Shown piece by piece: positions 131-15,051 of a DNA stretch of 64,000 bases. The stretch lies in IMG/VR virus record IMGVR_UViG_3300032268_000986, positions 124,001-188,000 of that record; one strand, 5' to 3'. The notes beneath the pieces were generated by a model. That model was not told where the DNA came from. It did not search any database and worked only from the letters and a program-made list of their open reading frames with translations. The translations under genes and the position numbers were made by a program. Within the stretch, counting starts at the first letter, position 1; every line of letters starts with the position of its first letter.

Positions 131-1018
131 TTATTTTCCCCATCCATTGCCCCAGAGATCCACATGCAATCTTGGGCTGTAGTTGTAGCCACGCTCCAGG
201 GCCCAGTTAGCCACATTCACACGATTCTTCTCATAAGGCACAGCTACGCCGCCCTGGGGCATGACAAAAACTTTACCTTTGAATCCTGCCTCACGATACT
301 CAGACACAGCCTGATCAACTTCTTCAAAGTGTGCCGCACTGTCAACAACAAACTTGAGATACACTGTGCCAACCCACTCATAGTCCACGACAATCTTGGG
401 TCGGATGGCGTCTGCCCATGATTCGCCACTGGCACTCAACTTTGGACTCACACTGAATGTGAGTGCTGCCGGTGTTCTTTTTTGCGCCAAGGAGTTGTGT
501 TTGCTGTTCAAGGTCCAGTTCAACAAGTATTGTCTAAACGCAGGTTGTAGTTCCTGAGTGCCATTGGTTTCAAATGTTAAATTTTGCAAATTCAACATGT
601 CAGGATGTGACAGCAATTCTTCATACGCACGTTGCCAACCCAGCAACGGCTCACCACCCGTGATCACAAGATGTACATCGTTACCATTGCGTTGTAACCA
701 TGTATGATTGGGAGTAAGCGCCAACATGCGCTCTACTACTTCACCAGTATTATAATTGGGACTTAGATGTTTGTAAGCCGGATGCCATGATGCATAGCTG
801 TCACATCCGGTTTCTACCAGGGGTAGATCTTCAAACCGATTATACATGTGAACAACTTCGGCCACTTCATCTGCACCAGTGGATCGTTCTCCAGGTTTGC
901 ATCCAAACCCTGCACAGGTAAAGTTACATCCAAATGTTCTCAAAAACACACTGGGCACGCCAACAAATCGGCCTTCGCCCTGTGCAGAATAAAATAGTTC
1001 GCTGATTTTTAATTTCAT
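131..1018 (-). CDS. queE: 7-carboxy-7-deazaguanine synthase (radical SAM)
   Basis: ISELFYSAQGEG, FLRTFGCNFTC...GCDS, VITGGEPL, FETNGT, SVSPKL, YSPRLHVDLWG are QueE-family motifs; clustered with queD and folE. Confidence 0.93.
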   Translation of the reverse strand: MKLKISELFYSAQGEGRFVGVPSVFLRTFGCNFTCAGFGCKPGERSTGADEVAEVVHMYNRFEDLPLVETGCDSYASWHPAYKHLSPNYNTGEVVERMLALTPNHTWLQRNGNDVHLVITGGEPLLGWQRAYEELLSHPDMLNLQNLTFETNGTQELQPAFRQYLLNWTLNSKHNSLAQKRTPAALTFSVSPKLSASGESWADAIRPKIVVDYEWVGTVYLKFVVDSAAHFEEVDQAVSEYREAGFKGKVFVMPQGGVAVPYEKNRVNVANWALERGYNYSPRLHVDLWGNGWGK

Positions 1019-1043
1019 ACTGTATTGTACAATAAATTTAATG

Positions 1044-3011: not shown

Positions 3012-3018
3012 TGGGTAT

Positions 3019-3852
3019 TTATTTTGATTTACTGTGTGGATATTTGAATTGCATCATCTGGCTGTTGATATCATTTTGTGCTAATTTCTCCCAGGGGTCC
3101 TGTGTGCCTTTGAATATATTTTGAAAGAATTCCACACTCATGCCAATGTTGTGCATGTGATTGGCCAACTTGATACAATCCTTGTGTCGCAATTCAATCA
3201 TACCGGCGCTATGGAAATCGTTGGGGTCATCAGGCTTGCCCTCTAACATGGGACGATTGCGGAACACATCATCGTTGTTGTTGCCTGTTAGATCATAACG
3301 ATCGTGCAACACATGTACGTCAATGCGCTGGTAAATGTCCAACATATAAGCCTGCTGGCTCACCCAGCCATCTTGTGTGGGATGTGGTGATATGTAGCCC
3401 AGTAACTCATACCACTTGCGCGGTACAATGGGAAAAATGCTATAGGGATGATCTCTGTGAGTGCGGAAAGACAAAAGTTTAAACTGATCAGTATAGCCGG
3501 CAATGACCTGATCCCAGTCCTGTGTTTCCATCACAGCATCATCATTCCACACTATCAACCAGTCAGCATCAGCATGTTTGGCCAAGGCATTGCTGTATTT
3601 GTGCAGGTTCACATAGCCCATGCGACGAAATTGCATGGCAATGAACTGAATGTGGTGTTGTTCCAACCAAGGTTTTAGGTGATCATGGAAATAAGTCAGG
3701 CCCACTTGATCATCATCATCAAACGCAAACAGCAGTTGAATTCGTTCTGGGCAGTCAGCAAGTTCAATCAAACTGCGAACACTGCGACCCAACATGTTGT
3801 CAGTACGTCCACGAGTAGCCAGCAGCACAGCAATGTCAAATCTAGATGTCAT
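3019..3852 (-). CDS. GT-A fold (family 2-like) glycosyltransferase
   Basis: IAVLLATRGR, FAFDDDD, WNDD acidic motif; start moved to MTSRFD behind GAGGAG RBS. Confidence 0.75.
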   Translation of the reverse strand: MTSRFDIAVLLATRGRTDNMLGRSVRSLIELADCPERIQLLFAFDDDDQVGLTYFHDHLKPWLEQHHIQFIAMQFRRMGYVNLHKYSNALAKHADADWLIVWNDDAVMETQDWDQVIAGYTDQFKLLSFRTHRDHPYSIFPIVPRKWYELLGYISPHPTQDGWVSQQAYMLDIYQRIDVHVLHDRYDLTGNNNDDVFRNRPMLEGKPDDPNDFHSAGMIELRHKDCIKLANHMHNIGMSVEFFQNIFKGTQDPWEKLAQNDINSQMMQFKYPHSKSK

Positions 3853-3853
3853 G

Positions 3854-4393
3854 TTACTCCTCGTAGGTTGCACTGTTTCCGGCATGTTCAAATACTTCAA
3901 CTGAACGCAGACGAACTTGTTCATTCATGAGATAACCAATGCTGTAGCCTTGTGATTGACCAGTGCGGTGGTTTGTGAATTCATAACGTTCGTCATCTTG
4001 AAATTTACGCAAGATACGAGCCATTTCTTCATATGCCAGTTTGGCAAATTTTTCACAACCCACACCATTGTCGAATATGCGTATATCACAAATGCCACCT
4101 CGATCTTGTATCCCAAGATCGGCCATGCTCTTGAACAGATCCACATGAGGATCATCACGTGCCACCAGTAGAGTATGATCAAACATGTTTTTAGCCCAGT
4201 CATGGAAGGACTTTAGCACGTCCGAATCTATGACCCAGTTGCAAACATCTAGAGACTCAGACTCAAACACCAAACGAAAGCCAATGGAATAACCATGAAG
4301 CAGACTACGGTGACTGTGGCGACTACGCCACTGTCTAAACACGCAGGAAAATCCTTGATCAGTGCCGTAGGTTTTTGTACTAGTATATTTCAT
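3854..4393 (-). CDS. Second, degenerate QueD-like protein (Cys replaced by Arg)
   Basis: Aligns with adjacent QueD (STKTYG, FRQW, LHGYS, NWV.D, FDH, EKFA, EHAGNSA.YE); HSHRSLLHG instead of HSHCHLLHG; start moved to MKYTSTK. Confidence 0.8.
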   Translation of the reverse strand: MKYTSTKTYGTDQGFSCVFRQWRSRHSHRSLLHGYSIGFRLVFESESLDVCNWVIDSDVLKSFHDWAKNMFDHTLLVARDDPHVDLFKSMADLGIQDRGGICDIRIFDNGVGCEKFAKLAYEEMARILRKFQDDERYEFTNHRTGQSQGYSIGYLMNEQVRLRSVEVFEHAGNSATYEE

Positions 4394-4868
4394 CCAACAA
4401 GTCCTCGTTCCAGTTGTTATGACCTTCGTAGATGGCGCTGTTGGCACCGTGTTCAGCGCACTCAACTCGTACACAATAACAACGATCGTTGGTCTTTTGT
4501 CGAATCAAGTCATCAGCAAAGTTAAAGGCATGTTCAGCAAACTTCTCTGCACCCACGCCATCAAAAATTCTAATCTCAGCTAGATCCAATGCTTCCAGTT
4601 CTTGGAATTTGGCCAAGTGTGGATCATTTTGATCCAAGGCTAGCTTGTGATCAAAGTGATCTTCCAGCCATGCTTTCAGCGGTTTGAGTCCGCCAAAGTC
4701 CACAGCCCAGTTCTTGTTGTCTAATTGATCACATCCAAATGTGAATGTAAACGCCAGACTGTAGCCATGTAGCAAATGACAGTGTGAATGATCTGCGTTG
4801 GGTTGACGGAACACCGCTGACAGACCAATGTTGTGTCCGTAATGTTTTGTTGAGTAATATTTTGCCAT
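4380..4868 (-). CDS. queD: 6-carboxy-5,6,7,8-tetrahydropterin synthase
   Basis: HSHCHLLHGYS (CxxxHG), VDFGGLK, DHFDHK, AEKFA motifs. Confidence 0.9.
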   Translation of the reverse strand: MAKYYSTKHYGHNIGLSAVFRQPNADHSHCHLLHGYSLAFTFTFGCDQLDNKNWAVDFGGLKPLKAWLEDHFDHKLALDQNDPHLAKFQELEALDLAEIRIFDGVGAEKFAEHAFNFADDLIRQKTNDRCYCVRVECAEHGANSAIYEGHNNWNEDLLDEIY

Positions 4869-4940
4869 TGTGATTCCCCTATGTTAGATTATAGCATAGG
4901 CAGCAGAGTTTGTATAGCGGGATGAAGCCAAAGACCGCTT
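4869..4940 (-). promoter_or_regulatory. Structured queD leader (preQ1-I-like stem-loop plus RBS-occluding hairpin) overlapping a possible sigma70 promoter
   Basis: AGCGG/CCGCU stem, A-rich tail, CCUAUG/CAUAGG hairpin over AGGGGA RBS; also TATACA-17-TATAAT with an extended -10 TG. Confidence 0.55.
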
Positions 4941-4948
4941 AAAAATAC

Positions 4949-5344
4949 TTATGCAGGCAGTTGATAGCCGTCTGCTTTGTAGTTGGCTTGCCCGGCAATA
5001 ACTCCACGCACACCGCCAATGGGATCAGCACAGTCACCCACACGGCGTGGTATCAAATGCACATGTGGGTACATCACAGTTTGCCCTGCTTCTCGACCCA
5101 TGTTGATGCCAATGTTAAATGCCGCACATTCACCTGTGGCTACCATTCTACGACCATGCCGCATGGCTGATTCAAAACATTCTATGATTACATCATCGGT
5201 ATTGTACTTGGGCACAAACAACAAGTGTCCATGCGTGACTGGAAACCGGTCCTGAAACACCGAGACATGATAGTCTGATAATTCACCTACCAACAGATCC
5301 CAGGGTGCAACACCATCTTTTTGTGCTTGTTCTAGGTCGGTCAT
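4949..5344 (-). CDS. HIT family nucleotide hydrolase
   Basis: FPVTHGHLLFVPK, GQTVMYPHVHLIPR (HxHxx variant of the histidine triad). Confidence 0.88.
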   Translation of the reverse strand: MTDLEQAQKDGVAPWDLLVGELSDYHVSVFQDRFPVTHGHLLFVPKYNTDDVIIECFESAMRHGRRMVATGECAAFNIGINMGREAGQTVMYPHVHLIPRRVGDCADPIGGVRGVIAGQANYKADGYQLPA

Positions 5345-5346
5345 GT

Positions 5347-6030
5347 TTAACCTCTGGTACAAGCATTGACAATGTTCATGAACTCAGTGCGCACTGATGG
5401 GTCACTGCGGAACACACCACCTAGTCGACTGGTCACAGTGCTGGATCCTGTGTCCTCAACACCACGACTTTTCACACAGTAGTGTTGAGCATTGATTACC
5501 ACGCCAATGTCATCAGTTTCCAAGATGTATTGCAAGGCATGATACACTTGTTCAGTCAGTCGTTCTTGAATTTGAGGACGCTTGGAGAAGTACTCTACGA
5601 TGCGATTGATCTTGCTGAGTCCCAGAACTTTTTGCTTGGGAATATAGCCCACAGTGGCCAAGCCGTCTATGACAACAAAGTGATGTTCACAGTTGCTTTG
5701 TACCGAAACGTTGCGTTCCACAACCATTTCATCATACTTCATTTTGTTGTCTACTGTGGTACACTTGGGAAACGCCTCGTAGTCCAGACCCCAGAAGATT
5801 TCGTTTACATACATCTTGGCCACACGCTTGGGTGTGTCACGCAGGCTGTCGTCATCTAGATCCAGACCCAGTACTTCCATGATGTGTTTGAAATCTTTTT
5901 CAATCAGTTCAATTTTATCTTTGCGATCAACTGAATGTTGAAATGTTGGAGTTTCCACACCACACTTGATCAAGTGCTGATGTACTAGTTGACCCAACTC
6001 GGGGTCGCATTTGGTTTTGTTATAGCTCAT
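5347..6030 (-). CDS. folE: GTP cyclohydrolase I
   Basis: TPKRVAKMY, SNCEHH, LGLSKINR, RPQIQERLT, HYCVKSRGV. Confidence 0.96.
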   Translation of the reverse strand: MSYNKTKCDPELGQLVHQHLIKCGVETPTFQHSVDRKDKIELIEKDFKHIMEVLGLDLDDDSLRDTPKRVAKMYVNEIFWGLDYEAFPKCTTVDNKMKYDEMVVERNVSVQSNCEHHFVVIDGLATVGYIPKQKVLGLSKINRIVEYFSKRPQIQERLTEQVYHALQYILETDDIGVVINAQHYCVKSRGVEDTGSSTVTSRLGGVFRSDPSVRTEFMNIVNACTRG

Positions 6031-6097
6031 TTTGATATCCTTCCTTACACGGATGTTAATTTTGAAGTTTGCTACCGTTGTGTAGCATGTTTATTTA
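6031..6097 (-). promoter_or_regulatory. TAAATA late-promoter motif and hairpin leader of folE
   Basis: TAAATA overlapping the upstream stop; UGCUAC/GUAGCA hairpin; AAGGAAGGA RBS. Confidence 0.5.
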
Positions 6098-6676
6098 GTC
6101 AGTGATTGTGATGGTTCTACAATCTGGATACATAACATGCTTGGGTGGCTCACTAACATATTTTGCCAGCAACTCACTGCCATGCTGGGCTTCTTCTATT
6201 GTGGGTTTGTAGTGATAGCCCACGCGGAAAACACGTTGGTCCTGCCAAGGGGCAATATTCAAATCCCTGCCATCATAACGCATGCGGATAATATCCTCAT
6301 AGGCCTGGTGGTCATCAAGTAGTATAGCACCACCGCGGCCTATTTGTAAAGGCTTAGTGTGTCCAAAACTCAAGCACTGCATGGCACCACCCTTGTACAT
6401 GTCCTGCTCTAGCCTGCGAGCACTATCCCAGATTCTAGTGCCCACAAACTCATATTCGCCTTGCCAGGACGTTGCCGTCAACTCATAATCAATGCCCAGT
6501 CGATGCATGATCATGGGCACACTCAAATAAGTGTAGCAGGTAAATGAACACTGCTTGACTTGATCATATCTCATGCACAGTTCAATTGCATGTGTGCAGC
6601 AATCGGTCATGATGGCATAGGGGGCGCCAGTGAACTTGGCCAGGCTTTTTTCAAATTTTAATATTTCGTCAAACAC
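6095..6676 (-). CDS. Compact DegT/DnrJ/EryC1/StrS-like PLP aminotransferase
   Basis: FEKSLAKFTGAPYA, THAIEL, WDSA, LSFGHTKPLQIGRGGAIL; GTG start overlapping the upstream stop inferred. Confidence 0.8.
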   Translation of the reverse strand: MFDEILKFEKSLAKFTGAPYAIMTDCCTHAIELCMRYDQVKQCSFTCYTYLSVPMIMHRLGIDYELTATSWQGEYEFVGTRIWDSARRLEQDMYKGGAMQCLSFGHTKPLQIGRGGAILLDDHQAYEDIIRMRYDGRDLNIAPWQDQRVFRVGYHYKPTIEEAQHGSELLAKYVSEPPKHVMYPDCRTITITD

Positions 6677-7667
6677 AATTTCTCTCCGGAAAAAAATCTT
6701 GTTTCTCTCCCTGTCGGGCAAGATCCAATGTAATGCAGTGTATGCCACCGTCCCAGAAATATCTATGTCTAAATGGGACAATGTGAGGGGTGATGCCATG
6801 ACGATCAAACGCCTCGAACACTTTTTCATTATAGTTATTGACAATCACATTGGTTGGATCGATGGTCAGCATGTTGACATCAAACACTGTTTCTTCAACA
6901 TAGCCCACCCAATGACTCAACCAGGTTTCCACGCAATCAATTACATCTTGGTCCTGTTCAAAGCCTGGAATCCACCAACGGCCTTGGTTCTTTTGTTTGA
7001 GAGTCATGAAACCTTGTACCTTGGCCCAGCTTTGGTCAGGCAAGTATACAACTTCCCAATCAGGGAATGTTTCTGTATAAGTGGGTATGTCATGCAGACT
7101 TACAATCAATCCCGGAGCCACTGGACAAAATGTACCATCAGTGTGACCAAAAGTTTCAATCACATGGGATCGATAACCAGGAAACTGTGCAGCCGCATAT
7201 TTTTTCATCTCTGCGTATGGCTCTGCTTGATAGCTACCAAAGTACAAGTCCTTGCCGATGCGACTGACCATGGCACCATTGGTCCATGAGTTTTGCATCA
7301 AGTGGGCGTTGTTGCCTTGTTGCTTGACAAGATTCAAAATTGGAGACCAGGTAGTTTGGTCATAGTAACTGTGATAAAACTCATTACCAATCATGATGGC
7401 ATTATCACGTGGCTGCATTGGTGGGCGAGTAATAGTTCCGTATTGGTTAAACGGTTCAGCCGGTAATTCGGGCCTAACCACTGTGACATCAAACTCTTGA
7501 AGTTTGTTGATTATGGCTTGGTAGTCTTCTTCGGTCTCTTGAGCTATTTTTTCAAACAACTCACGAACATGCGGAACCTTGATCCATGAATAAAACTCAG
7601 GTGGATAACTACGGCCCACTGCACACACCTGCAATGGATCCCAGGGTTGATGTACGCTGTAAGTCAT
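6669..7667 (-). CDS. Amidinotransferase family protein (glycine/inosamine-phosphate amidinotransferase-like)
   Basis: WDPLQVCAVG, QPRD, HTDG, DVNML, HRYFWDGGIHCITLD with C-terminal catalytic Cys. Confidence 0.85.
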   Translation of the reverse strand: MTYSVHQPWDPLQVCAVGRSYPPEFYSWIKVPHVRELFEKIAQETEEDYQAIINKLQEFDVTVVRPELPAEPFNQYGTITRPPMQPRDNAIMIGNEFYHSYYDQTTWSPILNLVKQQGNNAHLMQNSWTNGAMVSRIGKDLYFGSYQAEPYAEMKKYAAAQFPGYRSHVIETFGHTDGTFCPVAPGLIVSLHDIPTYTETFPDWEVVYLPDQSWAKVQGFMTLKQKNQGRWWIPGFEQDQDVIDCVETWLSHWVGYVEETVFDVNMLTIDPTNVIVNNYNEKVFEAFDRHGITPHIVPFRHRYFWDGGIHCITLDLARQGEKQDFFPERNCV

Positions 7668-8623
7668 CGCTGATACCAGGCCCATGCATGGCGAATCATG
7701 TCATCTAATTCAAACTGTCGCCAACTTCCGGCAACCTGGGAAAATTTGGCAGCACTGGCTGTGAGCACAGCCGGGTCTCCGGGCCTAGCATTACCTAGCA
7801 CAACTTTTAATTTTCGCCCGGTTACACGTTCAGCTGCGGCAATGATTTCTCTATTGCTAATACCGTTGTTGGAACCCAGATTGTAGACACCAGAAGGCAG
7901 TACTGGATTCAATGCCATGACATGTGCCTGGGCTATGTCTGCCACATGCACGTAGTCACGTACACATGTGCCATCCAGTGTGGGATAGTCTACACCATTT
8001 AATATAAATTCACGATCATCTCTCATGGCTTCCAACACTCTGGCAATGATGTGTGTAGCACCGGGCCTTTGCCCATGACGTTGTTGTGGATCAGCACTGC
8101 AAGCATTGAAATAACGGAATGCCACATACTCAAGCCCATAAGCACGATGATAACTTTTCAACATCATTTCAGTCATGTACTTGCTTTCGCCGTAAGGTGA
8201 GATTGGTTGAGCCACGTCAACTTCATGACAGGGATTCATCATGGGTTCACCATATACTGCGGCCGATGAACTAAAAATAAATCGAGTACGGGGCATGGCC
8301 TGACGAATAATGTCTAGTAAGATCTTGGTCTTGATCACATTGTTTTCGTAGTATGAAGATGGATCTGCAATGCTGGGACCTACCAAACTGGTACCACCAC
8401 AATGAATCACAGCAGAGGGCCGTGCCACAACAATATGTTTCAGTGCATCGTCGCTGGCAAAGTCAGCTAACAAAAATTCGTACCGGTCTGAAGGCTCTAT
8501 CTGTAGAGTTGATGGCATTTTTTGATTGTCAATACCCAGAACACTGTGACCAGCGTCGAGCAATGCCATTACAATTTGTCCGCCAATGTAGCCAGCGGCC
8601 CCTGTTACAATTATTTTATTCAT
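7664..8623 (-). CDS. galE: UDP-glucose 4-epimerase-like NAD-dependent epimerase
   Basis: VTGAAGYIG, FSSSAAVYG, SPYGESK (YxxxK), FRYFNA, RDYVHVAD. Confidence 0.9.
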   Translation of the reverse strand: MNKIIVTGAAGYIGGQIVMALLDAGHSVLGIDNQKMPSTLQIEPSDRYEFLLADFASDDALKHIVVARPSAVIHCGGTSLVGPSIADPSSYYENNVIKTKILLDIIRQAMPRTRFIFSSSAAVYGEPMMNPCHEVDVAQPISPYGESKYMTEMMLKSYHRAYGLEYVAFRYFNACSADPQQRHGQRPGATHIIARVLEAMRDDREFILNGVDYPTLDGTCVRDYVHVADIAQAHVMALNPVLPSGVYNLGSNNGISNREIIAAAERVTGRKLKVVLGNARPGDPAVLTASAAKFSQVAGSWRQFELDDMIRHAWAWYQR

Positions 8624-8624
8624 A

Positions 8625-9470
8625 TTATCCACAATGTTTAATACATTTTTGATTGGTCAAATCAGTGTCAACTTCTTGAATGTGTATTACATTTTGAAAT
8701 TTTTCACTTTTTTCTAAATAACAACATCTACTAATACTACCGTCAGCTGACACGTACACACTTGGAATAGACAAATGCATACAATTTTTAGCTTCAACAG
8801 TAGTTTTGACTCGATTAACTGTTGCTTGCATAAAAGTAGCCGGCAACAATTCAAACTCTTCGCCTGTTTGATAATGCCTGGCTTTTTTATTTGTACGATA
8901 GGTGTGCGCTAGACAAAACTTTTTAAAATTCATCTTTTGGCTCAACATTAGGCATTCAGGAATCTGGTGCTCGTTATGCCGGTAAGGGATAAACTGCCAA
9001 ATTGCATTTCCACCGTGATCAATAAATGCTTGTGCATTTTTTATGATCTTGTTAAAATCTGTGCCTTGCCTGTAGATTTCATGTACGCCAGCTAGTCCAT
9101 CAATACCAAACCAAACTTCATGATTCATGTCGGCAAGTTGTTGTGCAAACTCGGTCCACCAACTTTCGTTACGTAAACTACCATTGGTATGAAGTTGTAT
9201 TTTTTTACCGTATTTTTTTGAAATTGCAATCAAGTCAGTAATGTAGTCAGACGCAATGGGGTCACCGTAATTTCCACACAGTTGTACAGTATGAGAGTTT
9301 GGGAATTGTACAATAATCTCCTCATAGCGTTCCGGCATCAAATCCTGCTTGACAAGATTCGGATTGACACCAAATCCGTTTAGAGTTCGTGGACATGCTG
9401 GGCACCATGCATTGCATTTTGAGCTTGCTTCTACATGTATCCATCCAACGTCCTTGACAGATAGCGTCAC
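8625..9470 (-). CDS. Radical SAM protein with C-terminal SPASM/twitch-like Cys cluster
   Basis: SKCNAWCPACPR, GNYGDP, HTNGS, CCY; paralog of 24992..26035; GTG start overlapping the upstream TGA inferred. Confidence 0.85.
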   Translation of the reverse strand: MTLSVKDVGWIHVEASSKCNAWCPACPRTLNGFGVNPNLVKQDLMPERYEEIIVQFPNSHTVQLCGNYGDPIASDYITDLIAISKKYGKKIQLHTNGSLRNESWWTEFAQQLADMNHEVWFGIDGLAGVHEIYRQGTDFNKIIKNAQAFIDHGGNAIWQFIPYRHNEHQIPECLMLSQKMNFKKFCLAHTYRTNKKARHYQTGEEFELLPATFMQATVNRVKTTVEAKNCMHLSIPSVYVSADGSISRCCYLEKSEKFQNVIHIQEVDTDLTNQKCIKHCG

Positions 9471-10195
9471 TCTTCTATCCTTCTCGGTTTTTCCCATATC
9501 AGTCTCAACGATCCATTGAGATCCCCCAATGTTTGTCCTACATGATTTTCTACTACCAGCCAATGAAACGGCAATTGACGAATTGTTTGGTCAAAAAACT
9601 CAGCCAACTGCCAACTGGTTGGTTCAGCAGTTCCGAGATATTCAATAAACTGATCTGGGCGATTGGTTCTATTAACCATGCCTTGCACTGGTAGTGTCAC
9701 ACATGCCCGTCCACCAGGTGCCAACAAAAGATCAACGTCTAACAAGGATGCAGTAAGCGATCCTACATGATCATGATAGAGACTGTTAAAAGCAGCAACT
9801 GAATCAAACATGCCTGCATGTTCCACAGCGTACTGGTGATCGAAAGCAACAATTTCATCAGCATGCCCTGCAAACTTTTGGTCTATATCTATACCATGCA
9901 CTTGCGGATAAAATTTCTTAAAAATATTCATACCACATCCAATGTCAAGTATGGTAGCTGGTGACTTTTCTGCCACAATGTCGTAATATCGAAAAATTCC
10001 CATACCAAACATAGGTGTAAGAAATCGATCTCTAGGATTAATACCACGCATATCAGCATCGGCAAAAGTAGAATAACCAAATTGTATTCGATCCCCGGTA
10101 TTAAATGCATTACGAACACGTTCTTCGTATTGTTGTTTCTTGGCCGGAGTCCAGAACTCAATTTCGTTATAAGGGTTGATACATAACAATGACAT
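9467..10195 (-). CDS. Class I SAM-dependent methyltransferase
   Basis: ILDIGCG motif I, GIDID, LLAPGGR. Confidence 0.8.
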   Translation of the reverse strand: MSLLCINPYNEIEFWTPAKKQQYEERVRNAFNTGDRIQFGYSTFADADMRGINPRDRFLTPMFGMGIFRYYDIVAEKSPATILDIGCGMNIFKKFYPQVHGIDIDQKFAGHADEIVAFDHQYAVEHAGMFDSVAAFNSLYHDHVGSLTASLLDVDLLLAPGGRACVTLPVQGMVNRTNRPDQFIEYLGTAEPTSWQLAEFFDQTIRQLPFHWLVVENHVGQTLGDLNGSLRLIWEKPRRIEE

Positions 10196-10206
10196 TGATT
10201 ACCTTT

Positions 10207-11454
10207 TTATGATTCAATTTTTACCACTTGATATTTTTCATGGGCCACGTGATCACGATAGCGAGCACCTGAACGATTCCATGGTGTTGCTCGACACTCC
10301 ATGCCACCTTCGGCTATGGTTCCAGCAGTCTGCATGATGTCAATCACACGATCAACAGTGGCATTGTTCCAGTCTGAGATCAAGCCCATGTTGTGATGAG
10401 GTTCACGCAACAACAACTGCATCTTGTGGTAGGCATCATCTATGCTCCAAGGGACATAAAGCCTGTTTGGATCGTTGGCAAAGGTTTCGGGGAAACTACG
10501 ATAGGCAGGATAAAGCACGTTACAGCCAAGAGTGTCAGCCTCGGAAACTGTGTTAGAGACCCAGTCTTGTAAAGCACAATTAAACAACACACGAGTATTA
10601 TTGAGATGAGCATAGTATTCGTTCTTGCCAATGTTGTCGTAAATCTTTAGCTTGCCTTCAGCTTCCATGCGGCGGGCACGTTCAACAAACTCGGGATTGT
10701 TGCTTCGCAAAGGGCCGCCTGAGTATACTGCAAACTCACAGGGCTCACTGGTAAGTTCGCCATACATCTCAATCAGGTCCATGAAAAAGCCCGGTTGCTT
10801 CTCTTGGTCAAAGCGAGCTGCAAACCCCACTCTCCGAGGACGCTGATCAAACGGCTGGATATTTTCTACTCCACCAATACGTTCTAACACTTCCTCTTTG
10901 CCAAATGCCAGGCCAGATATGTTGTAGATGGGAGCCGTCCAACCAGCAATACGCATGTGGGCAACCATTTCTTCGTTTGTGGCAAGAACCGCACCACCAG
11001 AGAATGCCACCATCTCATTGACCATTTTTTCATACAGGTCCATCCACCGGTTCATGCCCCAGACATGCACAAAGTCATCAGGATCAATGGCCTGTGCTAG
11101 ACAACGCACAAAGATTCGTGGGCACTGCTCGCGAGGAATCTGATTCATGATGTAACCAAGACTTTCAAAGCCTGGTTGGAACATGTCTTCAAAGTAGATC
11201 ACATCGTCACCGGCGATGTCTCCGTTCTTCATCAGCTGAACCAGGTTCATCATTTGACTCATGGCAAAGTAACTGCGACCATGTGCGTCTAACACTTGCC
11301 CAACTGAGATGGCCTGTGTGTTGTCAATTGTAGTTCCGGGAACATACACAACATCAAGACCTCTACGATCAAACACGCGGCGGTTCCACTCTGTGAGTTG
11401 TAGAGTGTAGCGAGCTTCGTAACTTTCCAAGCCCATGTAAAATAGTTTTCTCAT
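10207..11454 (-). CDS. GT-B (family 4-like) glycosyltransferase
   Basis: GFAARFDQEKQP, SNTVSEADTLGC (E-x7 region), AYRSFPE. Confidence 0.8.
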   Translation of the reverse strand: MRKLFYMGLESYEARYTLQLTEWNRRVFDRRGLDVVYVPGTTIDNTQAISVGQVLDAHGRSYFAMSQMMNLVQLMKNGDIAGDDVIYFEDMFQPGFESLGYIMNQIPREQCPRIFVRCLAQAIDPDDFVHVWGMNRWMDLYEKMVNEMVAFSGGAVLATNEEMVAHMRIAGWTAPIYNISGLAFGKEEVLERIGGVENIQPFDQRPRRVGFAARFDQEKQPGFFMDLIEMYGELTSEPCEFAVYSGGPLRSNNPEFVERARRMEAEGKLKIYDNIGKNEYYAHLNNTRVLFNCALQDWVSNTVSEADTLGCNVLYPAYRSFPETFANDPNRLYVPWSIDDAYHKMQLLLREPHHNMGLISDWNNATVDRVIDIMQTAGTIAEGGMECRATPWNRSGARYRDHVAHEKYQVVKIES

Positions 11455-11455
11455 C

Positions 11456-12340
11456 TCAGTCCTTTAGTAACCTAATAGTATTATTATACAACGTATTAAA
11501 CAAATGTCTAGTGTTGGATGAATTGTATTTGCTCATACTCTCATTGTATTCTTGAATAATTTTGTTTTTCTCGTATGACATCTTGCCATGCGGTGATTGA
11601 TAGTGTTCAATTACATATTCTGTGGGCATGATCAACACAGATTTTTTTAAAACATATTTAAAAAACAACGAATGATCAAGCACCAACTTGGACATATTGG
11701 TCCAATCGTTATCAATCCAGGTTTGAGTAATAGCAGGCACCTGGAAGTCATAGTTATCCAGGGGGCTTCCTTTTACGTTGTGGAGCACACGATTTGATGC
11801 TATCATTATCCACAAACTACTGGCGCACTCCCATTGGTCTTCTCTCCAATTTAACACAGACGATTCAGCATTTAGAAATCGTTGATCAATACGTCTTGTA
11901 TGTTCAAAACTTTTTTTCCCTTGTGCTTTCCAGGCTTGCTCTAGGTGAGAACTTGCGGTTCTACCGGTAGTAATGATAACACACTCGGCAACAGAATTTG
12001 TGGGCAATACAAAGTCGCACACAATCTCATCTGAAAAACAAAGGTTATTCACCACAGCATTGTTTAACCAAGTAACTTGATCATACGGGTGACACTCGGG
12101 CAACAAGTTTGCTAGATCGTCGGCATGCGTGGATATATGTCTCACAATCCGCACTCCTAGCTCTCGTGCCTGTTGCAGATTTTCTGTAGAAGCGTCTGCG
12201 TGGCAAATTTCATACAGCCCCGGTTTAATATGGTACTTGGCCGACTCTGCCCAGTTACCATGAAACTGCAAATAACTAAATTTGTTTTTGTAAAATTCAA
12301 CTATTCTGCGGTTGCCGTTATGAAAAATGCAAACACTCAT
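11456..12340 (-). CDS. Hypothetical protein with a sulfotransferase-like P-loop segment
   Basis: IITTGRTASSHL resembles the PAPS-binding 5'-PSB motif; AT-richer than its neighbours. Confidence 0.4.
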   Translation of the reverse strand: MSVCIFHNGNRRIVEFYKNKFSYLQFHGNWAESAKYHIKPGLYEICHADASTENLQQARELGVRIVRHISTHADDLANLLPECHPYDQVTWLNNAVVNNLCFSDEIVCDFVLPTNSVAECVIITTGRTASSHLEQAWKAQGKKSFEHTRRIDQRFLNAESSVLNWREDQWECASSLWIMIASNRVLHNVKGSPLDNYDFQVPAITQTWIDNDWTNMSKLVLDHSLFFKYVLKKSVLIMPTEYVIEHYQSPHGKMSYEKNKIIQEYNESMSKYNSSNTRHLFNTLYNNTIRLLKD

Positions 12341-12564
12341 GCAGGGCGGTATCCTGCAAAGCGGCGTAGATCTTCACTCCACATGTTCTTGGCGTTCTTG
12401 CCTTGTGAGAACTTGTTGTACTGTTGCCAGGCATAGGCCTTGAAATTGTAGAGATCGGCTTCGTTGTAGCGATAGCCGTGATCTACACAGAACTCTCGAA
12501 GTTTGTCCAAGTCGTCAAACAGGTCACGCACACGAGGATTGGGTTTGATAGTAAATTTTGCCAT
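12337..12564 (-). CDS. Small hypothetical protein
   Basis: 75-aa ORF tightly packed in the operon. Confidence 0.7.
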   Translation of the reverse strand: MAKFTIKPNPRVRDLFDDLDKLREFCVDHGYRYNEADLYNFKAYAWQQYNKFSQGKNAKNMWSEDLRRFAGYRPA

Positions 12565-12566
12565 GA

Positions 12567-13016
12567 TTAAATTTTAATTGAAAGATTGGGACGAGTGAGT
12601 TCATATTTAATAAAGCAGCCGTTCTCACCATCTTCGGCTATTTCAATCCAGACTGTACGTCCGGGATACTTTTGCACAATCTGATCATATAGATCGTCTG
12701 CGATCATTTCACATGATTTGTAGTCTAACGACAATACACCTTGGTCGCTATGATACAGTCTTTCCAACCAGCGTTTGAATTGTATAAACTCCACATCTCG
12801 GTCATTGTGGAATACGTCAATCCAAACCCTAAAATGAAAAATATGGCGATGAGGATAGCCCAAAAACGAAACATCATATTCATCTCCTGTTGCTAGTTGT
12901 GGGTCTTGTGAGGCTGCTGGATACTTATGGATACCTTCTTTGCGGAACGTGATCCAGATTTTTCGTTCAGCATGTTGTTTGATTCGGTCAACTGTTTCTC
13001 GTTCTTGTTGGTTCAT
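12567..13016 (-). CDS. dpdL: DpdL-like T-fold protein (candidate 7-carboxy-7-deazaguanine decarboxylase)
   Basis: LGYPHRHIF fits the LxxxHRHxF signature as I recall it; KSCEMIA parallels the T-fold PTAENIA motif; near the TGT-like gene. Confidence 0.72.
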   Translation of the reverse strand: MNQQERETVDRIKQHAERKIWITFRKEGIHKYPAASQDPQLATGDEYDVSFLGYPHRHIFHFRVWIDVFHNDRDVEFIQFKRWLERLYHSDQGVLSLDYKSCEMIADDLYDQIVQKYPGRTVWIEIAEDGENGCFIKYELTRPNLSIKI

Positions 13017-13510
13017 AATGGTTCATCCTTGCTGTAATCATCCCATGATGTAAATGCATCACGACTCATTAGACTGTGTAGACTGTGACACCAAACACCA
13101 GGATTGGTGGCATCAAAGTCTTTGTCGTCTATTTTTAACATTGTATTATAATTCCACAACTTTGTATACGGTACACTTACTCGAATCTGTGGAATAAAGT
13201 TGCGGTACTCGCAAAGTGAGCCATCATTGAATTCTTCCACATGCGTGACGGGAATGTCCAGACTGCACAAATAACCCTGGGCCAAGAACGGCTCAATCAT
13301 GCTTTCCCACCTCTGCCACTCTAGACGATCATCAGGATGAAAACTGTGATTGGCACCAAAGAAAATGTGCTCTGCCCCATTCAGGTTCAATGCAATTGCA
13401 TCGGCGGATTGAACACCAACCACAAACAATGTGCGCCGGCCAAATGCTGGGGTTCGTTCTACTTCGGTTCCGGTAAAGAAATTGACATTGCCATGACCTT
13501 CTCGATTCAT
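13013..13510 (-). CDS. Hypothetical protein between dpdL-like and dpdA-like genes
   Basis: 165-aa ORF with ATGA-type overlaps on both sides. Confidence 0.75.
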   Translation of the reverse strand: MNREGHGNVNFFTGTEVERTPAFGRRTLFVVGVQSADAIALNLNGAEHIFFGANHSFHPDDRLEWQRWESMIEPFLAQGYLCSLDIPVTHVEEFNDGSLCEYRNFIPQIRVSVPYTKLWNYNTMLKIDDKDFDATNPGVWCHSLHSLMSRDAFTSWDDYSKDEPL

Positions 13511-15051
13511 ATGCTATCCTCTAATTCATCTAGTTTGTCAGTATCCAACTCATCGGGGTCAATGGTCACAGGTTCATCAAAACTGAACAACACATCAAAC
13601 ATGGGTCTTGCTGACACCAGTTTTTTGCCGGTAAATCCACGTGTGCCAATGATCAGGTCCAGGACTTTTTCATAGTGAGTGATACGGTCCATTCTGCTAG
13701 TATAGCTGGGTTGGCTAAAGATGTCATCCACTATGGCACGGAAATCATGATCAGGAGTGGTACGCCCGGCCAACATTCCAGGCTTGCTGCCCAGATCATA
13801 TTGCTCGTTGGCAGTTTGCACAGCATTGATGTGCTGCCACACATTGTGGCCCATGAGCAATGCATAACTGAAACTGTCCCATGATGTTTTGCCTTCTTTG
13901 CCAATCTTGTTGAGATCACCGGGTCCGTAAACACAAACATCAGAAACCTTGAGCCTGGCCGAAATTGGAGAATCATCAAACTCGGTATGAATACCATCTT
14001 GAATCACTGCATCTCGGAAACTGCGTTGGTCTGTCTTGTACTTTTTGTTGTCGGCAGTGGGTGCCATGCGATAGGTCCACTTGTCACGATTGGGATAACT
14101 GCTTTGATAATACAGTTGACCATTTGCTGTGGCCAGGAACGGTGATGCACAGTCAAACGAAATTGTGAACTGTGGATTGTGATACTTGCGCACCGCACGT
14201 TGGATGTCTGTGAGCAAACACGCCCACTCCAGTTTGCTGGTGCCCAAGAAGTGCATCCAGTCATGTACGCCAGGTTCCAGCAACCGGTCACGCATGAGTG
14301 TGACTATTCTACGCAACACCAAGTGAACATCGCACATGTTCTGTCCGCCCATGCCCCAACCATTGAAGTGGCGTCCGGGGTATTGCACAGGATCAGAATA
14401 CTTCTTCATGGTCTCGTACCAGGAGTCTGCTTCCACATGATTGGCACCTTGCAACACATTGAGCAGTCGTGCTCCACCGTTGTCTATGCCGCGACGATTG
14501 GCAATAAAGTAATCGTTGTTGTAGATTGTGGCATCCACCGCATCTTGGTAGTTGCGGATACCGGTCTTTTCACTGCTGCCAGGCCACTTTGATGTCCATG
14601 TAGGGATATCCAAGGTCAAGCCATATGTGGCCAGGCCGTCTTGCCATTTGAGCACGGCTTCTCGTTTTTTCTGTGCCCGGGGACAACCTGAATTGGCCTT
14701 CCAGTCACCGTCCCACACACCCTTGGCAATTTGGAATCCACCCGAGTCACACAACAATACAGTATTGGGGTCGCGACTGCGCAACATGTCCTCTTTGGGA
14801 TTGTGCTTGGTCAAGTCTAAGTCAGCATGTCCAGCCGAATACAATGCCCAACGATATGGGAACAGTCCTTGCTGTGCATTGAGAAAATTCATGCTCTCCA
14901 TGTCAGGCATGTTCTTGGGCATGCGGGCAGCTTCTACATAGGGTTCAAATCGTTGACGCCCAATGTAGGTACTGTAGAAACTGCTGATGGCCGGCAAGAA
15001 CACAGCATAGTCATGCTGTCTTGCAGTTAGATCATGTTGCTCTATGGTCAT
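13507..15051 (-). CDS. dpdA: TGT-fold transglycosylase, DpdA-like (inserts 7-deazaguanine base into DNA)
   Basis: CDSGGFQ, LDIP, NVLQG, GWGMGG, HFLGTS, SFDCASP; lacks the CxCxxC Zn site of bacterial tRNA Tgt; phage context with folE/queD/queE. Confidence 0.8.
   Translation of the reverse strand: MTIEQHDLTARQHDYAVFLPAISSFYSTYIGRQRFEPYVEAARMPKNMPDMESMNFLNAQQGLFPYRWALYSAGHADLDLTKHNPKEDMLRSRDPNTVLLCDSGGFQIAKGVWDGDWKANSGCPRAQKKREAVLKWQDGLATYGLTLDIPTWTSKWPGSSEKTGIRNYQDAVDATIYNNDYFIANRRGIDNGGARLLNVLQGANHVEADSWYETMKKYSDPVQYPGRHFNGWGMGGQNMCDVHLVLRRIVTLMRDRLLEPGVHDWMHFLGTSKLEWACLLTDIQRAVRKYHNPQFTISFDCASPFLATANGQLYYQSSYPNRDKWTYRMAPTADNKKYKTDQRSFRDAVIQDGIHTEFDDSPISARLKVSDVCVYGPGDLNKIGKEGKTSWDSFSYALLMGHNVWQHINAVQTANEQYDLGSKPGMLAGRTTPDHDFRAIVDDIFSQPSYTSRMDRITHYEKVLDLIIGTRGFTGKKLVSARPMFDVLFSFDEPVTIDPDELDTDKLDELEDSI

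What the first reader, a model, noticed from the sequence alone, without database searches (positions are those of the whole stretch)
131..15051. 7-deazaguanine DNA modification pathway without QueC but with a DpdL-like decarboxylase
Seen: folE, queD, queE, a TGT-fold gene lacking the tRNA-Tgt Zn motif, and a T-fold protein with LGYPHRHIF; no queC/queF/arcS in this window. Established (from recall): phage DpdA enzymes insert 7-deazaguanines into DNA, and DpdL, a QueD-like LxxxHRHxF protein, is proposed to decarboxylate CDG to 7-deazaguanine. Inference: the genome carries dDG (or dCDG) as anti-restriction protection.
Basis: partly seen in the sequence, partly recalled or inferred. Interest (0 to 1): 0.68.

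Follow-up and report, generated by a model that had tools for sequence, protein, structure and literature searches.

The report
Jumbo-phage 7-deazaguanine DNA-modification island with sugar genes
A freshwater giant phage carries a known type of gene set for replacing guanine in its DNA with a 7-deazaguanine base, but it uses an unclassified inserting enzyme, and conserved sugar-transfer genes sit among the pathway genes, which hints at a more elaborate base than any yet described.

Summary
On the minus strand of window 131-15051 lie FolE, QueD, a QueE-like radical-SAM enzyme, a DpdL homologue (LGYPHRHIF) and a 514-aa TGT-fold protein. That protein keeps the TGT catalytic residues but has no CxCxxC zinc motif. 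The 343-kb phage record, estimated 99% complete, has no QueC, QueF or ArcS.

The basic reading is sound but not new. A QueC-less FolE/QueD/QueE/DpdL/DpdA set is the Cellulophaga phage phiST type, whose DNA was shown to carry dDG.

Three points add to it:
- The TGT-like enzyme belongs to a very large family with no Pfam annotation. It includes PA5oct, Vibrio phage 2.275.O and Sinorhizobium phage Phosso. It is only remotely related to DpdA2-type enzymes and barely to DpdA3.
In related loci with enough flank, a GT4-type glycosyltransferase (44/45), GalE (39/39) and two small proteins (63/63 and 48/48) are near-universal.
- The GT4 gene lies next to or near dpdL in seven phage lineages, whichever DpdA type they carry.

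The end product may therefore be a decorated, possibly glycosylated, 7-deazaguanine rather than plain dDG. Only mass spectrometry of virion DNA can settle this.

The parts
131..1018 (-). QueE-like radical-SAM enzyme (CDG synthase candidate), 295 aa
   Evidence: phrog_2076 'QueE-like', E 9.5e-50 over the full length. NCBIfam QueE models match only residues 1-36. 43% identical to the annotated QueE of Synechococcus phage BUCT-ZZ01, 30-32% to those of PA5oct and Xanthomonas phage BUDD.
1044..3011 (-). Cobalamin-dependent radical-SAM C-methyltransferase (TokK/CysS/KedN5-like), 655 aa; accessory
   Evidence: PF02310 and PF04055. NF033712, E 1.5e-81. PDB TokK, E 5.8e-86; CysS, E 5.8e-47. Found in only a subset of relatives.
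3019..3924 (-). GT-A-like glycosyltransferase candidate, 301 aa
   Evidence: phrog_14945 'glycosyltransferase', E 1.3e-9. Lies between QueD and QueE in relatives whose flank reaches that far. No Pfam or PDB sequence hit.
3854..4474 (-). Second QueD/PTPS paralogue with the catalytic Cys replaced by Arg (SHRSLLHGY)
   Evidence: PF01242, E 4e-11. The Arg variant occurs only in the window and its closest relative L007.
4380..4868 (-). QueD (CPH4 synthase), 162 aa, motif SHCHLLHGY
   Evidence: PF01242, 53 bits. phrog_2389, E 1.3e-41. 53%, 45% and 40% identical to the QueD of BUCT-ZZ01, phiST and ACP17.
4949..5362 (-). HIT-family nucleotide hydrolase/transferase, 137 aa
   Evidence: PF01230, E 1.7e-9. 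Lies between FolE and QueD in many relatives.
5347..6030 (-). FolE, GTP cyclohydrolase I, 227 aa
   Evidence: PF01227, E 5e-62. NF006824, 323.9 bits against a cut-off of 202.
6095..6844 (-). Short DegT/DnrJ-like PLP protein; the true start is uncertain because the ORF overlaps the upstream gene
   Evidence: PF01041, E 1.6e-12, covering the SF..HTK lysine region. Present in 23 related loci.
6669..7685 (-). Amidinotransferase-family enzyme, 338 aa, C-terminal GGIHCITLD; accessory
   Evidence: PDB HsvA, E 8.5e-10; AGAT, StrB1 and SxtG, E 1e-6 to 3e-8, aligned across the catalytic Cys. Its position varies among relatives.
7664..8632 (-). GalE, UDP-hexose 4-epimerase, 322 aa
   Evidence: TIGR01179, 297 bits against a cut-off of 262. 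Present in 39 of 39 relatives with enough flank.
8625..9563 (-). Radical-SAM enzyme, 312 aa; insertion specific to this genome
   Evidence: PF04055 at the cut-off. phrog_21308, E 3e-24. Absent from this position even in the relative whose DpdA is 96% identical (L007).
9467..10195 (-). Class-I methyltransferase-like protein, 242 aa; insertion specific to this genome
   Evidence: PF13489, E 1.8e-5, below the cut-off. Found in 2 of 80 loci, at another position.
10207..11454 (-). GT-B/GT4-type glycosyltransferase, 415 aa; core partner of DpdL
   Evidence: The AF2 model (pLDDT 72) matches BshA, MshA, PimA and PglA, E about 1e-9. D297-x7-E305 and R....EKQP are conserved. Present in 44 of 45 relatives. 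Homologues lie within about 4 kb of dpdL, mostly directly beside it, in PA5oct, ACP17, BUCT-ZZ01, Phosso, BUDD/X1 and BCSR5.
11456..12340 (-). Unknown 294-aa protein; accessory
   Evidence: No family hit. Found only in L007 and L008.
12337..12564 (-). Conserved 75-aa protein of unknown function
   Evidence: Present in 48 of 48 relatives with enough flank. Its stop overlaps the start of the next gene.
12567..13016 (-). DpdL homologue (proposed CDG decarboxylase), 149 aa, motif LGYPHRHIF
   Evidence: 57% identical to ACP17 DpdL, 55% to the PA5oct homologue, 36% to phiST DpdL, in the alignment (tblastn). phrog_17812, E 3.7e-34. Present in 53 of 53 relatives.
13013..13510 (-). Conserved 165-aa protein of unknown function, overlapping DpdA and DpdL by 4 nt on each side
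   Evidence: Present in 63 of 63 relatives. A homologue (31% identity, E 4e-12) lies directly upstream of dpdA in ACP17. The protein-atlas search gave only a weak helicase-C look-alike.
13507..15051 (-). Divergent DpdA-like guanine transglycosylase (TGT fold), 514 aa
   Evidence: AF2 pLDDT 90.6. Foldseek: TGTs, E about 4e-7. VIA-align: Z 19.8. D102, S103, G105, P150, H267, G270 and D300 are invariant across 59 diverse homologues. hhalign to ACP17 DpdA: 96.5%, E 7e-10. No Pfam or PDB sequence hit.
15058..19418 (-). Upstream replication genes in the same orientation: a clamp-like protein (15058-15780), a 314-aa unknown protein, and family-B DNA polymerase (16752-19418)
   Evidence: phrog_12062. 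The homologue in Phosso is annotated as a sliding clamp. PolB is 43-50% identical to those of PA5oct, Phosso and Vibrio 2.275.O. The synteny holds in 74-79 of 80 loci.

Best explanation
This is a phage DNA-modification island of the DpdL type.

Proposed pathway:
1. FolE turns GTP into dihydroneopterin triphosphate.
2. QueD makes CPH4.
3. The QueE-like radical-SAM enzyme makes 7-carboxy-7-deazaguanine (CDG).
4. Because the phage has no QueC, QueF or ArcS, the pathway does not go on to preQ0, preQ1 or G+.
5. The DpdL homologue is inferred to remove the carboxyl group and give 7-deazaguanine. This activity has never been shown.
6. The divergent TGT-fold DpdA-like enzyme, encoded just downstream of the polymerase and a clamp-like gene, swaps that base for guanine in replicated phage DNA. 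This would protect the DNA from restriction enzymes.

The que genes are interleaved with a conserved sugar set: a GT4 glycosyltransferase, GalE, a GT-A-like protein, HIT, and a cytidylyltransferase-like gene just outside the window. This genome also carries tailoring enzymes: an amidinotransferase, a DegT-like protein, a TokK-like B12 methylase, a radical-SAM enzyme and a methyltransferase. I therefore think the inserted base, or a precursor, is further decorated, most likely glycosylated.

Shown: gene identities, protein folds, conservation of catalytic residues, absence of QueC/QueF/ArcS, and synteny. Inferred: every chemical step, the DNA target, and the decoration. The confidence of 0.65 is for the core claim, that a CDG-derived, non-preQ0 deazaguanine is inserted into DNA by this enzyme. 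I give the decoration about 0.35-0.4.
For: -
- The DpdL motif and homology to the two phages in which DpdL was defined come and PMC10516641.
- The TGT fold is well supported (Z 19.8). The counterparts of TGT D102, D156, Q203, the GG pair and D280 are kept as D102, D148, Q201, G235/G236 and D300.
- The family links by profile to a phage DpdA. The nearest viral models include the 'tRNA guanine transglycosylase' of Achromobacter phage Motura and the DpdA2 of Vibrio phage nt-1.
- Homologues of this enzyme lie beside QueF, QueC and FolE in Vibrio phage 2.275.O and near QueE in PA5oct.
- PA5oct DNA resists G-containing restriction sites and is attacked by nucleases that sense modified G (PMC12191111).
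- No QueC, QueF, ArcS or thymidylate-synthase-like hydroxymethylase is present.
- Start and stop codons overlap or nearly abut along DpdA, u165, DpdL, u75, u294 and GT4.
- Conservation among relatives with enough flank: u165 63/63, DpdL 53/53, u75 48/48, GT4 44/45, GalE 39/39.
- Of 23 cultured-phage records with this GT4, 18 also carry DpdL, out of 28 DpdL records among 50,697 records. The two genes are next to or near each other in lineages with different DpdA types.
- The GT4 keeps its D/E-x7-E motif.
Against: - No chemistry was measured.
- DpdL plus DpdA from phiST and ACP17 gave no dDG in E. coli (PMC10516641), so DpdL's role is unproven.
- phiST has DpdL but no GT4 within the 7 kb fetched on each side of dpdL, and its DNA carries plain dDG. 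DpdL therefore does not need the GT4.
- dDG has no hydroxyl group, so an O-glycoside is chemically awkward and no precedent exists.
- The host could supply QueC, which would allow preQ0.
- The QueE-like protein matches curated QueE models only at its N-terminus and has an unusual Cys spacing.
- The GT4 model is of moderate quality (pLDDT 72).
- The shared synteny across the 80 loci partly reflects common descent.
Confidence: 0.65

Rival explanations
1. Plain dDG, as in phiST. The deazaguanine genes make 7-deazaguanine and DpdA inserts it. The glycosyltransferases, GalE and the tailoring enzymes serve something else, such as glycosylation of virion or host surface molecules, and merely share the early or replication transcription unit.
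For: - phiST and vibriophage VP1 carry unadorned dDG at full replacement (PMC10516641; bioRxiv 10.1101/2025.10.29.685425).
- dDG has no obvious sugar acceptor.
- RHph_I1_18 and Ahp1 have DpdL without this GT4 within 12 kb, and phiST has none within the 7 kb fetched on each side.
- The tailoring genes vary between close relatives.
Against: - GT4 lies next to or near dpdL in seven lineages with different backbones and different DpdA types. The two genes overlap in 18 of 23 GT4 records, where chance would give about 0.01.
- GT4 is more conserved than DpdA itself (median 75% against 64% identity).
- The GT-A-like gene sits between QueD and QueE, and GalE between GT4 and FolE.
- No hydroxymethyl-pyrimidine pathway exists to give the glycosyltransferases another DNA acceptor.
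Confidence: 0.3
2. CDG itself is inserted to give dCDG, and DpdL, with or without GT4 and u165, acts afterwards on DNA. Alternatively, DpdL is not a decarboxylase and the final base keeps a C7 substituent that provides the handle for glycosylation.
For: - Cui et al. consider that DpdA3 may insert CDG.
- VH7D DpdA2 inserts CDG at low efficiency (PMC10516641).
- DpdL activity was never reconstituted.
- u165 and GT4 lie between or beside dpdA and dpdL and were not included in the failed reconstitution with ACP17 genes.
Against: - The structural model of DpdL in the founding paper was read as acting on the free base (PMC10516641).
- phiST DNA contains no dCDG.
- Nothing in my data separates the order of the steps.
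Confidence: 0.15
3. The island does not modify phage DNA. It either manipulates the host's queuosine/tRNA or pterin metabolism, with the TGT-like enzyme acting on tRNA, or it overproduces CDG for the host QueC so that a preQ0-type base is made.
For: - The fold is that of tRNA-guanine transglycosylases.
- FolE and PTPS-family enzymes also serve pterin synthesis.
- Iyer et al. note that phages may complement host deazaguanine systems (PMC7824862).
- The host is unknown.
Against: - There is no zinc motif, and the protein falls below every Pfam TGT threshold.
- The gene is embedded in the replication module.
- DpdL is present, and it is known only from phages with a DNA-modification cluster.
- PA5oct's DNA, not only its tRNA, behaves as G-modified (PMC12191111).
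Confidence: 0.07

Closest known systems
Cellulophaga phage phiST dDG system (FolE, QueD, QueE, DpdL, DpdA3; Cui et al. 2023, PMC10516641)
   Same: It has the same logic and the same gene set without QueC. The DpdL is homologous (36% identity in the alignment) and carries the LxxxHRHxF motif. The QueD has the same CxxxHGY variant. The cluster lies next to the DNA polymerase.
   Different: - The transglycosylase is not DpdA3: BLAST finds no similarity, hhalign gives 68% over 82 columns, and Foldseek gives E 0.017.
- phiST has no GT4, u165 or GalE equivalents in the region fetched.
- phiST is a 78-kb phage, whereas this is a 343-kb jumbo phage.
Acidovorax phage ACP17 and Synechococcus phage BUCT-ZZ01 clusters (T4-like phages with DpdL)
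   Same: Both have QueD, FolE, DpdA, GT4, DpdL and QueE in one cluster. ACP17 also has a u165 homologue directly upstream of dpdA. DpdL is 57% identical in ACP17, and GT4 is 63% identical in BUCT-ZZ01.
   Different: Their DpdA resembles nt-1/VH7D DpdA2 (33-36% identity), not the window's family. Their modification has not been determined, and reconstitution with ACP17 dpdA plus dpdL failed (PMC10516641).
Pseudomonas jumbo phage PA5oct (Wroclawvirus) deazaguanine system
   Same: It has the same DpdA-like family (36% identity), followed by GT4 and DpdL, with QueE nearby and PolB and the clamp-like gene upstream. Its DNA resists G-containing restriction sites (PMC12191111). Iyer et al. 2021 noted the system computationally (PMC7824862).
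   Different: BLAST found no GalE, GT-A-like, amidinotransferase, DegT-like or B12 radical-SAM homologues in the region fetched; only a weak Rossmann-type match to GalE appeared. PA5oct's DpdL has HFH instead of HRH. Its modification has not been identified chemically.
Bacterial, archaeal and eukaryotic tRNA-guanine transglycosylases (TGT / ArcTGT / QTRT1)
   Same: TIM-barrel fold, Z 19-20 over about 300 residues. The DSGG Asp, the substrate Asp, the QG and GG motifs and the nucleophile Asp are kept.
   Different: There is no CxCxxC zinc site, no Pfam TGT match and 12-16% identity. It carries N- and C-terminal extensions, and its gene context is DNA replication.
Phage DNA glycosylation systems (T4 alpha/beta-glucosyltransferases on 5hmC; arabinosyl-5-hydroxycytosine in RB69 and DLP3, PMC13326640)
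   Same: Nucleotide-sugar-dependent glycosyltransferases and sugar-nucleotide supply genes are encoded together with base-modification genes in a replication-linked cluster.
   Different: Those systems glycosylate a hydroxylated pyrimidine made by a thymidylate-synthase homologue, and none is present here. A glycosylated purine or deazapurine in DNA has no precedent in the literature I could search.

Membership tests
DpdA (DNA guanine transglycosylase superfamily) | TGT-type TIM-barrel fold | tested here: met
   AF2 pLDDT 90.6. Foldseek puts TGTs at the top, E about 4e-7. VIA-align gives Z 19.8, 304 aligned residues, rmsd 4.4.
DpdA (DNA guanine transglycosylase superfamily) | Catalytic Asp pair and the substrate-pocket residues of TGT | tested here: met
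   D102 (DSGGFQ) and D300 (SFDCASP) are invariant in 59 homologues. D148 is nearly invariant (at least 90%), and the QG (Q201) and GG (G235/G236) motifs align to TGT D156, Q203 and G229/G230. The HMMER alignment to TGT is not significant on its own (E about 3).
DpdA (DNA guanine transglycosylase superfamily) | Encoded together with 7-deazaguanine synthesis genes in a phage | tested here: met
   for the window, for 80 relatives, and for PA5oct and Vibrio phage 2.275.O.
DpdA (DNA guanine transglycosylase superfamily) | Inserts a 7-deazaguanine into DNA | not testable with these tools
   This needs an enzyme assay or LC-MS of DNA.
DpdA3 subfamily (phiST, Campylobacter phages) | Sequence relationship to phiST CGPG_00065 | tested here: not met
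   BLASTP finds nothing. hhalign gives 68.5% over 82 columns. Foldseek to the phiST model gives E 0.017.
DpdA2 subfamily (nt-1, VH7D; ACP17-like) | Sequence relationship to nt-1/VH7D/ACP17 DpdA | tested here: inconclusive
   hhalign to ACP17 DpdA gives 96.5%, E 7e-10 over 176 columns. Foldseek to the nt-1 model gives E 9e-10. BLASTP finds nothing and tblastn retrieves no DpdA2 phage. This is a remote sister group, not a member. No tree against DpdA1-4 was built.
tRNA-guanine transglycosylase (Pfam PF01702) | Score above the Pfam gathering threshold; CxCxxC...H zinc site | tested here: not met
   No PF01702 match, either on the protein at E up to 0.01 or genome-wide at E up to 10. No CxCxxC.
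DpdL (proposed CDG decarboxylase) | QueD-like T-fold paralogue with LxxxHRHxF in place of CxxxHGH | tested here: met
   LGYPHRHIF. It aligns with phiST LSLNHRHLF and ACP17 LGSPHRHLF.
DpdL (proposed CDG decarboxylase) | Homology to the founding members (phiST CGPG_00067, ACP17) | tested here: met
   tblastn E 2e-38 to ACP17 and 7e-8 to phiST. 57% and 36% identity in the alignment.
DpdL (proposed CDG decarboxylase) | Occurs with FolE, QueD, QueE and DpdA but without QueC | tested here: met
DpdL (proposed CDG decarboxylase) | Decarboxylates CDG to 7-deazaguanine | not testable with these tools
   The activity has not been shown for any member; the founding paper reports failed reconstitution (PMC10516641).
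QueD (CPH4 synthase) | PTPS fold, with the catalytic Cys in a CxxxHG[HY] motif | tested here: met
   For 4380-4868: PF01242, 53 bits, and SHCHLLHGY. The paralogue at 3854-4474 has Arg in place of Cys and does not meet this feature.
QueE (CDG synthase) | Full-length match to curated QueE models, with the radical-SAM Cys triad | tested here: inconclusive
   The phage QueE-like phrog matches over the full length, E 9.5e-50. NCBIfam QueE equivalogs match only residues 1-36, far below their cut-offs. From the sequence, the third Cys appears displaced by an insertion of about 35 residues (C31, C35 ... C72-D).
GT4 / GT-B glycosyltransferases | GT-B two-Rossmann fold and the E/D-x7-E motif | tested here: met
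   Foldseek to BshA, MshA, PimA and PglA gives E about 1e-9 to 1e-7, TM 0.5-0.6, on a model of pLDDT 72. D297-x7-E305 is conserved across lineages. The protein-atlas look-alikes carry Glycos_transf_1. The protein has no Pfam hit of its own.

The most novel reading that the evidence does not exclude
In this very large clade of freshwater jumbo phages, and in PA5oct, Phosso, ACP17, BUCT-ZZ01, BUDD/X1 and BCSR5, the DpdL route does not end at dDG. The conserved GT4, fed by GalE and followed by the GT-A-like enzyme, would attach sugar to the 7-deazaguanine or to a C7-substituted precursor. That would be the first glycosylated purine-type base in any DNA. In this genome the sugar or base would be tailored further by the amidinotransferase, the DegT-like protein and the TokK-like iterative C-methylase. 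The same idea would explain why dpdA plus dpdL alone failed to give dDG in E. coli.
Probability: 0.3. Interest if true: 0.85.

Novelty: new variant of a known kind. Interest (0 to 1): 0.55.

Why it matters
7-Deazaguanine DNA modifications are a major way for phages to escape restriction, and hosts now target them in turn with END nucleases and Dag glycosylases. Three things follow from this locus:

- A transglycosylase family with no Pfam annotation is one of the most abundant carriers of the pathway.
- The family is absent from the DpdA1-4 scheme as far as I could test.
- A GT4 glycosyltransferase and two small proteins travel with DpdL across unrelated phages. These are concrete candidates for the 'other unknown enzymes' that the DpdL discoverers suspected.

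If the sugar genes act on the base, the result would be a new class of DNA hypermodification. It could be tested directly in cultured phages, including PA5oct, which has been studied as a candidate against P. aeruginosa infection (PMC13282480).

Tried and rejected
- Megablast of window 1-16000 against 50,697 phage records found nothing.
- Pfam, NCBIfam and PHROGs gave nothing for the 514-aa protein. PF01702 found nothing genome-wide at E up to 10.
- PDB sequence searches found no significant TGT match, using the single protein, a 24-sequence profile and a 59-sequence profile. Only structure comparison and profile-profile comparison linked the protein to TGT and DpdA.
- The weak QueC hit is NadE. 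The weak QueF hit lies inside folE.
- There is no thymidylate-synthase homologue, so I rejected a hydroxymethyl- or hydroxy-pyrimidine acceptor for the glycosyltransferases.
- The PDB profile search for GT4 was uninformative.
- The protein-atlas search for u165 gave only a sub-threshold helicase-C look-alike, which I treat as no result.
- The GT-A-like protein has no PDB sequence hit.
- The promoter and terminator scan was close to the shuffle expectation and did not define operon boundaries.
- The supplement of Cui et al. 2023 and the 2024 MMBR review are not held. I therefore could not check whether PA5oct-type enzymes were already assigned to a DpdA subfamily there.
- No phylogeny against DpdA1-4 was built. 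At 12-16% identity a tree would be unreliable, and I lacked reference sets for DpdA1, DpdA4 and bDpdA.
- Read laying and complex prediction were not used, because no claim here depends on them.

Full report
**Setting.** The window is bases 124001-188000 of a 342,865-bp IMG/VR virus record that CheckV rates 99% complete, so this is a jumbo phage. Megablast found no close cultured relative. Near-identical DNA occurs in the metagenomes of one study, and weaker partial matches are mostly in freshwater and lake metagenomes. From 131 to 19418 every real gene lies on the minus strand, and many start and stop codons overlap or nearly abut.

**Checking the observation.**
- FolE, 5347-6030: NF006824, 323.9 bits against a cut-off of 202.
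- QueD, 4380-4868: PF01242; motif SHCHLLHGY.
- QueE-like radical-SAM protein, 131-1018: phrog_2076, E 9.5e-50 over the full length. Curated NCBIfam QueE models match only its first 36 residues.
- DpdL-like protein, 12567-13016, with LGYPHRHIF.
- A 514-aa protein, 13507-15051, with LLCDSGGFQ and SFDCASP.

The phage encodes no QueC, QueF or ArcS. The one weak QueC hit is NAD synthase. The one weak QueF hit lies inside folE. ArcS gave nothing.

**The TGT-like enzyme.** Sequence methods fail on it. It has no Pfam, NCBIfam or PHROG hit, no PF01702 match in the genome, and no significant PDB sequence hit even with profiles.

Structure comparison is clear. An AlphaFold2 model built on 59 diverse homologues reaches pLDDT 90.6. 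Its best Foldseek matches are all tRNA-guanine transglycosylases, at E about 4e-7. VIA-align gives Z 19-20 over about 300 residues for bacterial, archaeal and eukaryotic TGTs.

D102, S103, G105, P150, H267, G270 and D300 are invariant across the family. D102, D148, Q201, G235/G236 and D300 line up with TGT D102, D156, Q203, G229/G230 and D280.

**How the enzyme relates to known DpdA subfamilies.**
- Profile comparison links the family to ACP17's DpdA at 96.5% probability, E 7e-10. ACP17's DpdA in turn resembles the DpdA2 of nt-1 and VH7D (PMC10516641).
- The link to phiST DpdA3 is weak, at 68.5%.
- The closest viral models are a 596-aa protein with no name in the library (E 6e-30), Achromobacter phage Motura's 'tRNA guanine transglycosylase', and nt-1 DpdA2. 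phiST DpdA3 ranks far below them.
None carries a Pfam domain.
- Cultured members are the PA5oct-like Pseudomonas jumbo phages (36% identity), Vibrio phage 2.275.O and Sinorhizobium phage Phosso.
- In Vibrio 2.275.O the gene sits beside QueF, a YhhQ-like transporter, QueC and FolE. In PA5oct it sits near QueE.

The family is therefore consistently tied to deazaguanine genes, but with different end products in different phages.

**DpdL.** The 149-aa protein is 57% identical to ACP17's DpdL and 36% to phiST's, the two phages in which DpdL was defined. It shares their LxxxHRHxF motif (PMC10516641). phiST DNA is fully substituted with dDG. A QueC-less FolE/QueD/QueE/DpdL/DpdA set is thus a published type, and vibriophage VP1 is a second phage fully substituted with dDG (bioRxiv 10.1101/2025.10.29.685425). 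DpdL's decarboxylase activity is still only a proposal. Cui et al. could not obtain dDG from dpdL plus dpdA in E. coli and suggested that other enzymes may be needed.

The span holds 18 genes, not five. The additional ones are:
- A TokK/CysS-like cobalamin radical-SAM C-methylase, 1044-3011 (PDB TokK, E 5.8e-86).
- A GT-A-like protein, 3019-3924.
- A second QueD paralogue with the catalytic Cys replaced by Arg, 3854-4474.
- A HIT protein.
- A short DegT-like PLP protein.
- An amidinotransferase, 6669-7685 (HsvA, AGAT and StrB1, E 1e-6 to 8.5e-10).
- GalE, 7664-8632 (TIGR01179, above its cut-off).
- A radical-SAM enzyme and a methyltransferase-like protein, 8625-10195.
- A 415-aa protein, 10207-11454, whose model is a GT-B/GT4 glycosyltransferase (BshA, MshA, PimA; E about 1e-9) with a conserved D-x7-E motif.
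- Three small or unknown proteins (294, 75 and 165 aa).

Just left of the window lie a cytidylyltransferase-like gene, a 5'-3' exonuclease, an HhH-GPD fragment and a MazG-like gene.

**Comparative evidence.** I fetched 80 IMG/VR loci around homologues of the 514-aa protein and mapped the window's proteins onto them. The recurring order is: PolB, u314, clamp-like, DpdA, u165, DpdL, u75, GT4, GalE, (DegT-like), FolE, (HIT), QueD, GT-A-like, (B12 radical-SAM), QueE, cytidylyltransferase-like.

Among loci with enough downstream sequence, the counts are u165 63/63, DpdL 53/53, u75 48/48, GT4 44/45, GalE 39/39 and FolE 33/37. GT4 is more conserved than DpdA (median 75% against 64% identity). The radical-SAM and methyltransferase pair, the 294-aa protein and the Arg-type QueD paralogue are private to this genome or its nearest relative.

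Outside this clade, the GT4 lies within about 4 kb of dpdL, mostly directly beside it, in PA5oct, ACP17, BUCT-ZZ01 (63% identical), Phosso, BUDD/X1 and BCSR5. These lineages have different DpdA types. In the phage collection, 18 of the 23 records with this GT4 also carry DpdL, and there are 28 DpdL records among 50,697. ACP17 also has a u165 homologue directly upstream of its dpdA.

phiST (within 7 kb of dpdL), RHph_I1_18 and Ahp1 (within 12 kb) have DpdL without the GT4. The GT4 is therefore a frequent partner, not an obligatory one.

**Interpretation.** The core model is that FolE, QueD and QueE make CDG, DpdL acts on it, and the DpdA-like enzyme inserts the product into DNA after replication. 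Gene identity, fold, active-site conservation, the missing QueC/QueF/ArcS and the replication-module context all support this. PA5oct's G-linked restriction resistance and its sensitivity to nucleases that sense modified G support it too (PMC12191111). I give the core model about 0.65.

The interleaving of sugar genes and their cross-lineage linkage to DpdL argue that the end product in GT4-bearing phages is more than dDG. No hydroxylated pyrimidine pathway exists here to give the glycosyltransferases another DNA acceptor. Against this, dDG offers no hydroxyl group, phiST manages without the GT4, and nothing was measured. I give decoration about 0.35-0.4, and a genuinely glycosylated deazaguanine about 0.3.

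**Novelty.**
- The basic pathway is known.
- Iyer et al. 2021 already noted a deazaguanine synthesis and incorporation system in PA5oct (PMC7824862).
- The END-nuclease preprint noted QueE and PTPS in PA5oct but not a transglycosylase (PMC12191111).
- New here: the size and distinctness of this DpdA-like family, which fits neither DpdA3 nor, convincingly, DpdA2; the conserved DpdA-u165-DpdL-u75-GT4-GalE core; and the tailoring set in this genome.

I could not see the supplements of Cui et al. 2023, so an earlier subfamily assignment for PA5oct-type enzymes cannot be excluded.

Noticed in passing
window 20547-21848 (-): A full-length S-adenosyl-L-homocysteine hydrolase (PF05221, E 7e-130) lies about 1 kb upstream of PolB. 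It may recycle SAH from the many SAM-dependent enzymes of this phage: three radical-SAM enzymes and the methyltransferases.
   Followed up: no
window 24992-26035 (+): A further radical-SAM/SPASM enzyme on the opposite strand, in a short block of plus-strand genes. Its function is unknown.
   Followed up: no
window 32651-36772 (-): A 1373-aa protein with a central Amidoligase_2 domain (E 5e-6), followed at 31201-32646 by a 481-aa protein with weak GNAT matches. They could form a separate modification or conflict system.
   Followed up: no
window 41107-43425 (-): A ClpB/Hsp104-type double-AAA+ chaperone (AAA_2, E 2e-51, with Clp_N and ClpB_D2-small domains) encoded by the phage.
   Followed up: no
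window 3854-4474 (-): A recent QueD duplicate with the catalytic Cys changed to Arg (SHRSLLHGY). It occurs only here and in the closest relative L007. Together with QueD and DpdL it gives three QueD/PTPS-type proteins in one island. Its function is unknown.
   Followed up: partly
G000:C1:117109-123825 (just left of the window): Downstream of QueE on the same strand lie a cytidylyltransferase-like gene, two unknown genes, a 5'-3' exonuclease, a short HhH-GPD glycosylase-like protein, a MazG/PRA-PH-like pyrophosphatase and a Bax-inhibitor-1-like membrane protein. In phiST, a MazG-like gene lies directly beside dpdL.
   Followed up: partly
G000:C1:210392-211267 (L001 892-1767, -): The phage encodes an NAD synthase (NadE; PF02540, E 1e-47). 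This was the only weak QueC-like hit in the genome.
   Followed up: yes
L088 7093-7554 (Synechococcus phage BUCT-ZZ01): In BUCT-ZZ01 a gene annotated as xanthine-guanine phosphoribosyltransferase lies between QueE and QueD in the DpdL/GT4 cluster. This hints that some of these clusters may handle the base at the nucleotide level.
   Followed up: no
window 6669-6844: The DegT-like ORF overlaps the end of the amidinotransferase gene by up to 176 nt and lacks the usual DegT N-terminus. Its true start is unresolved.
   Followed up: no
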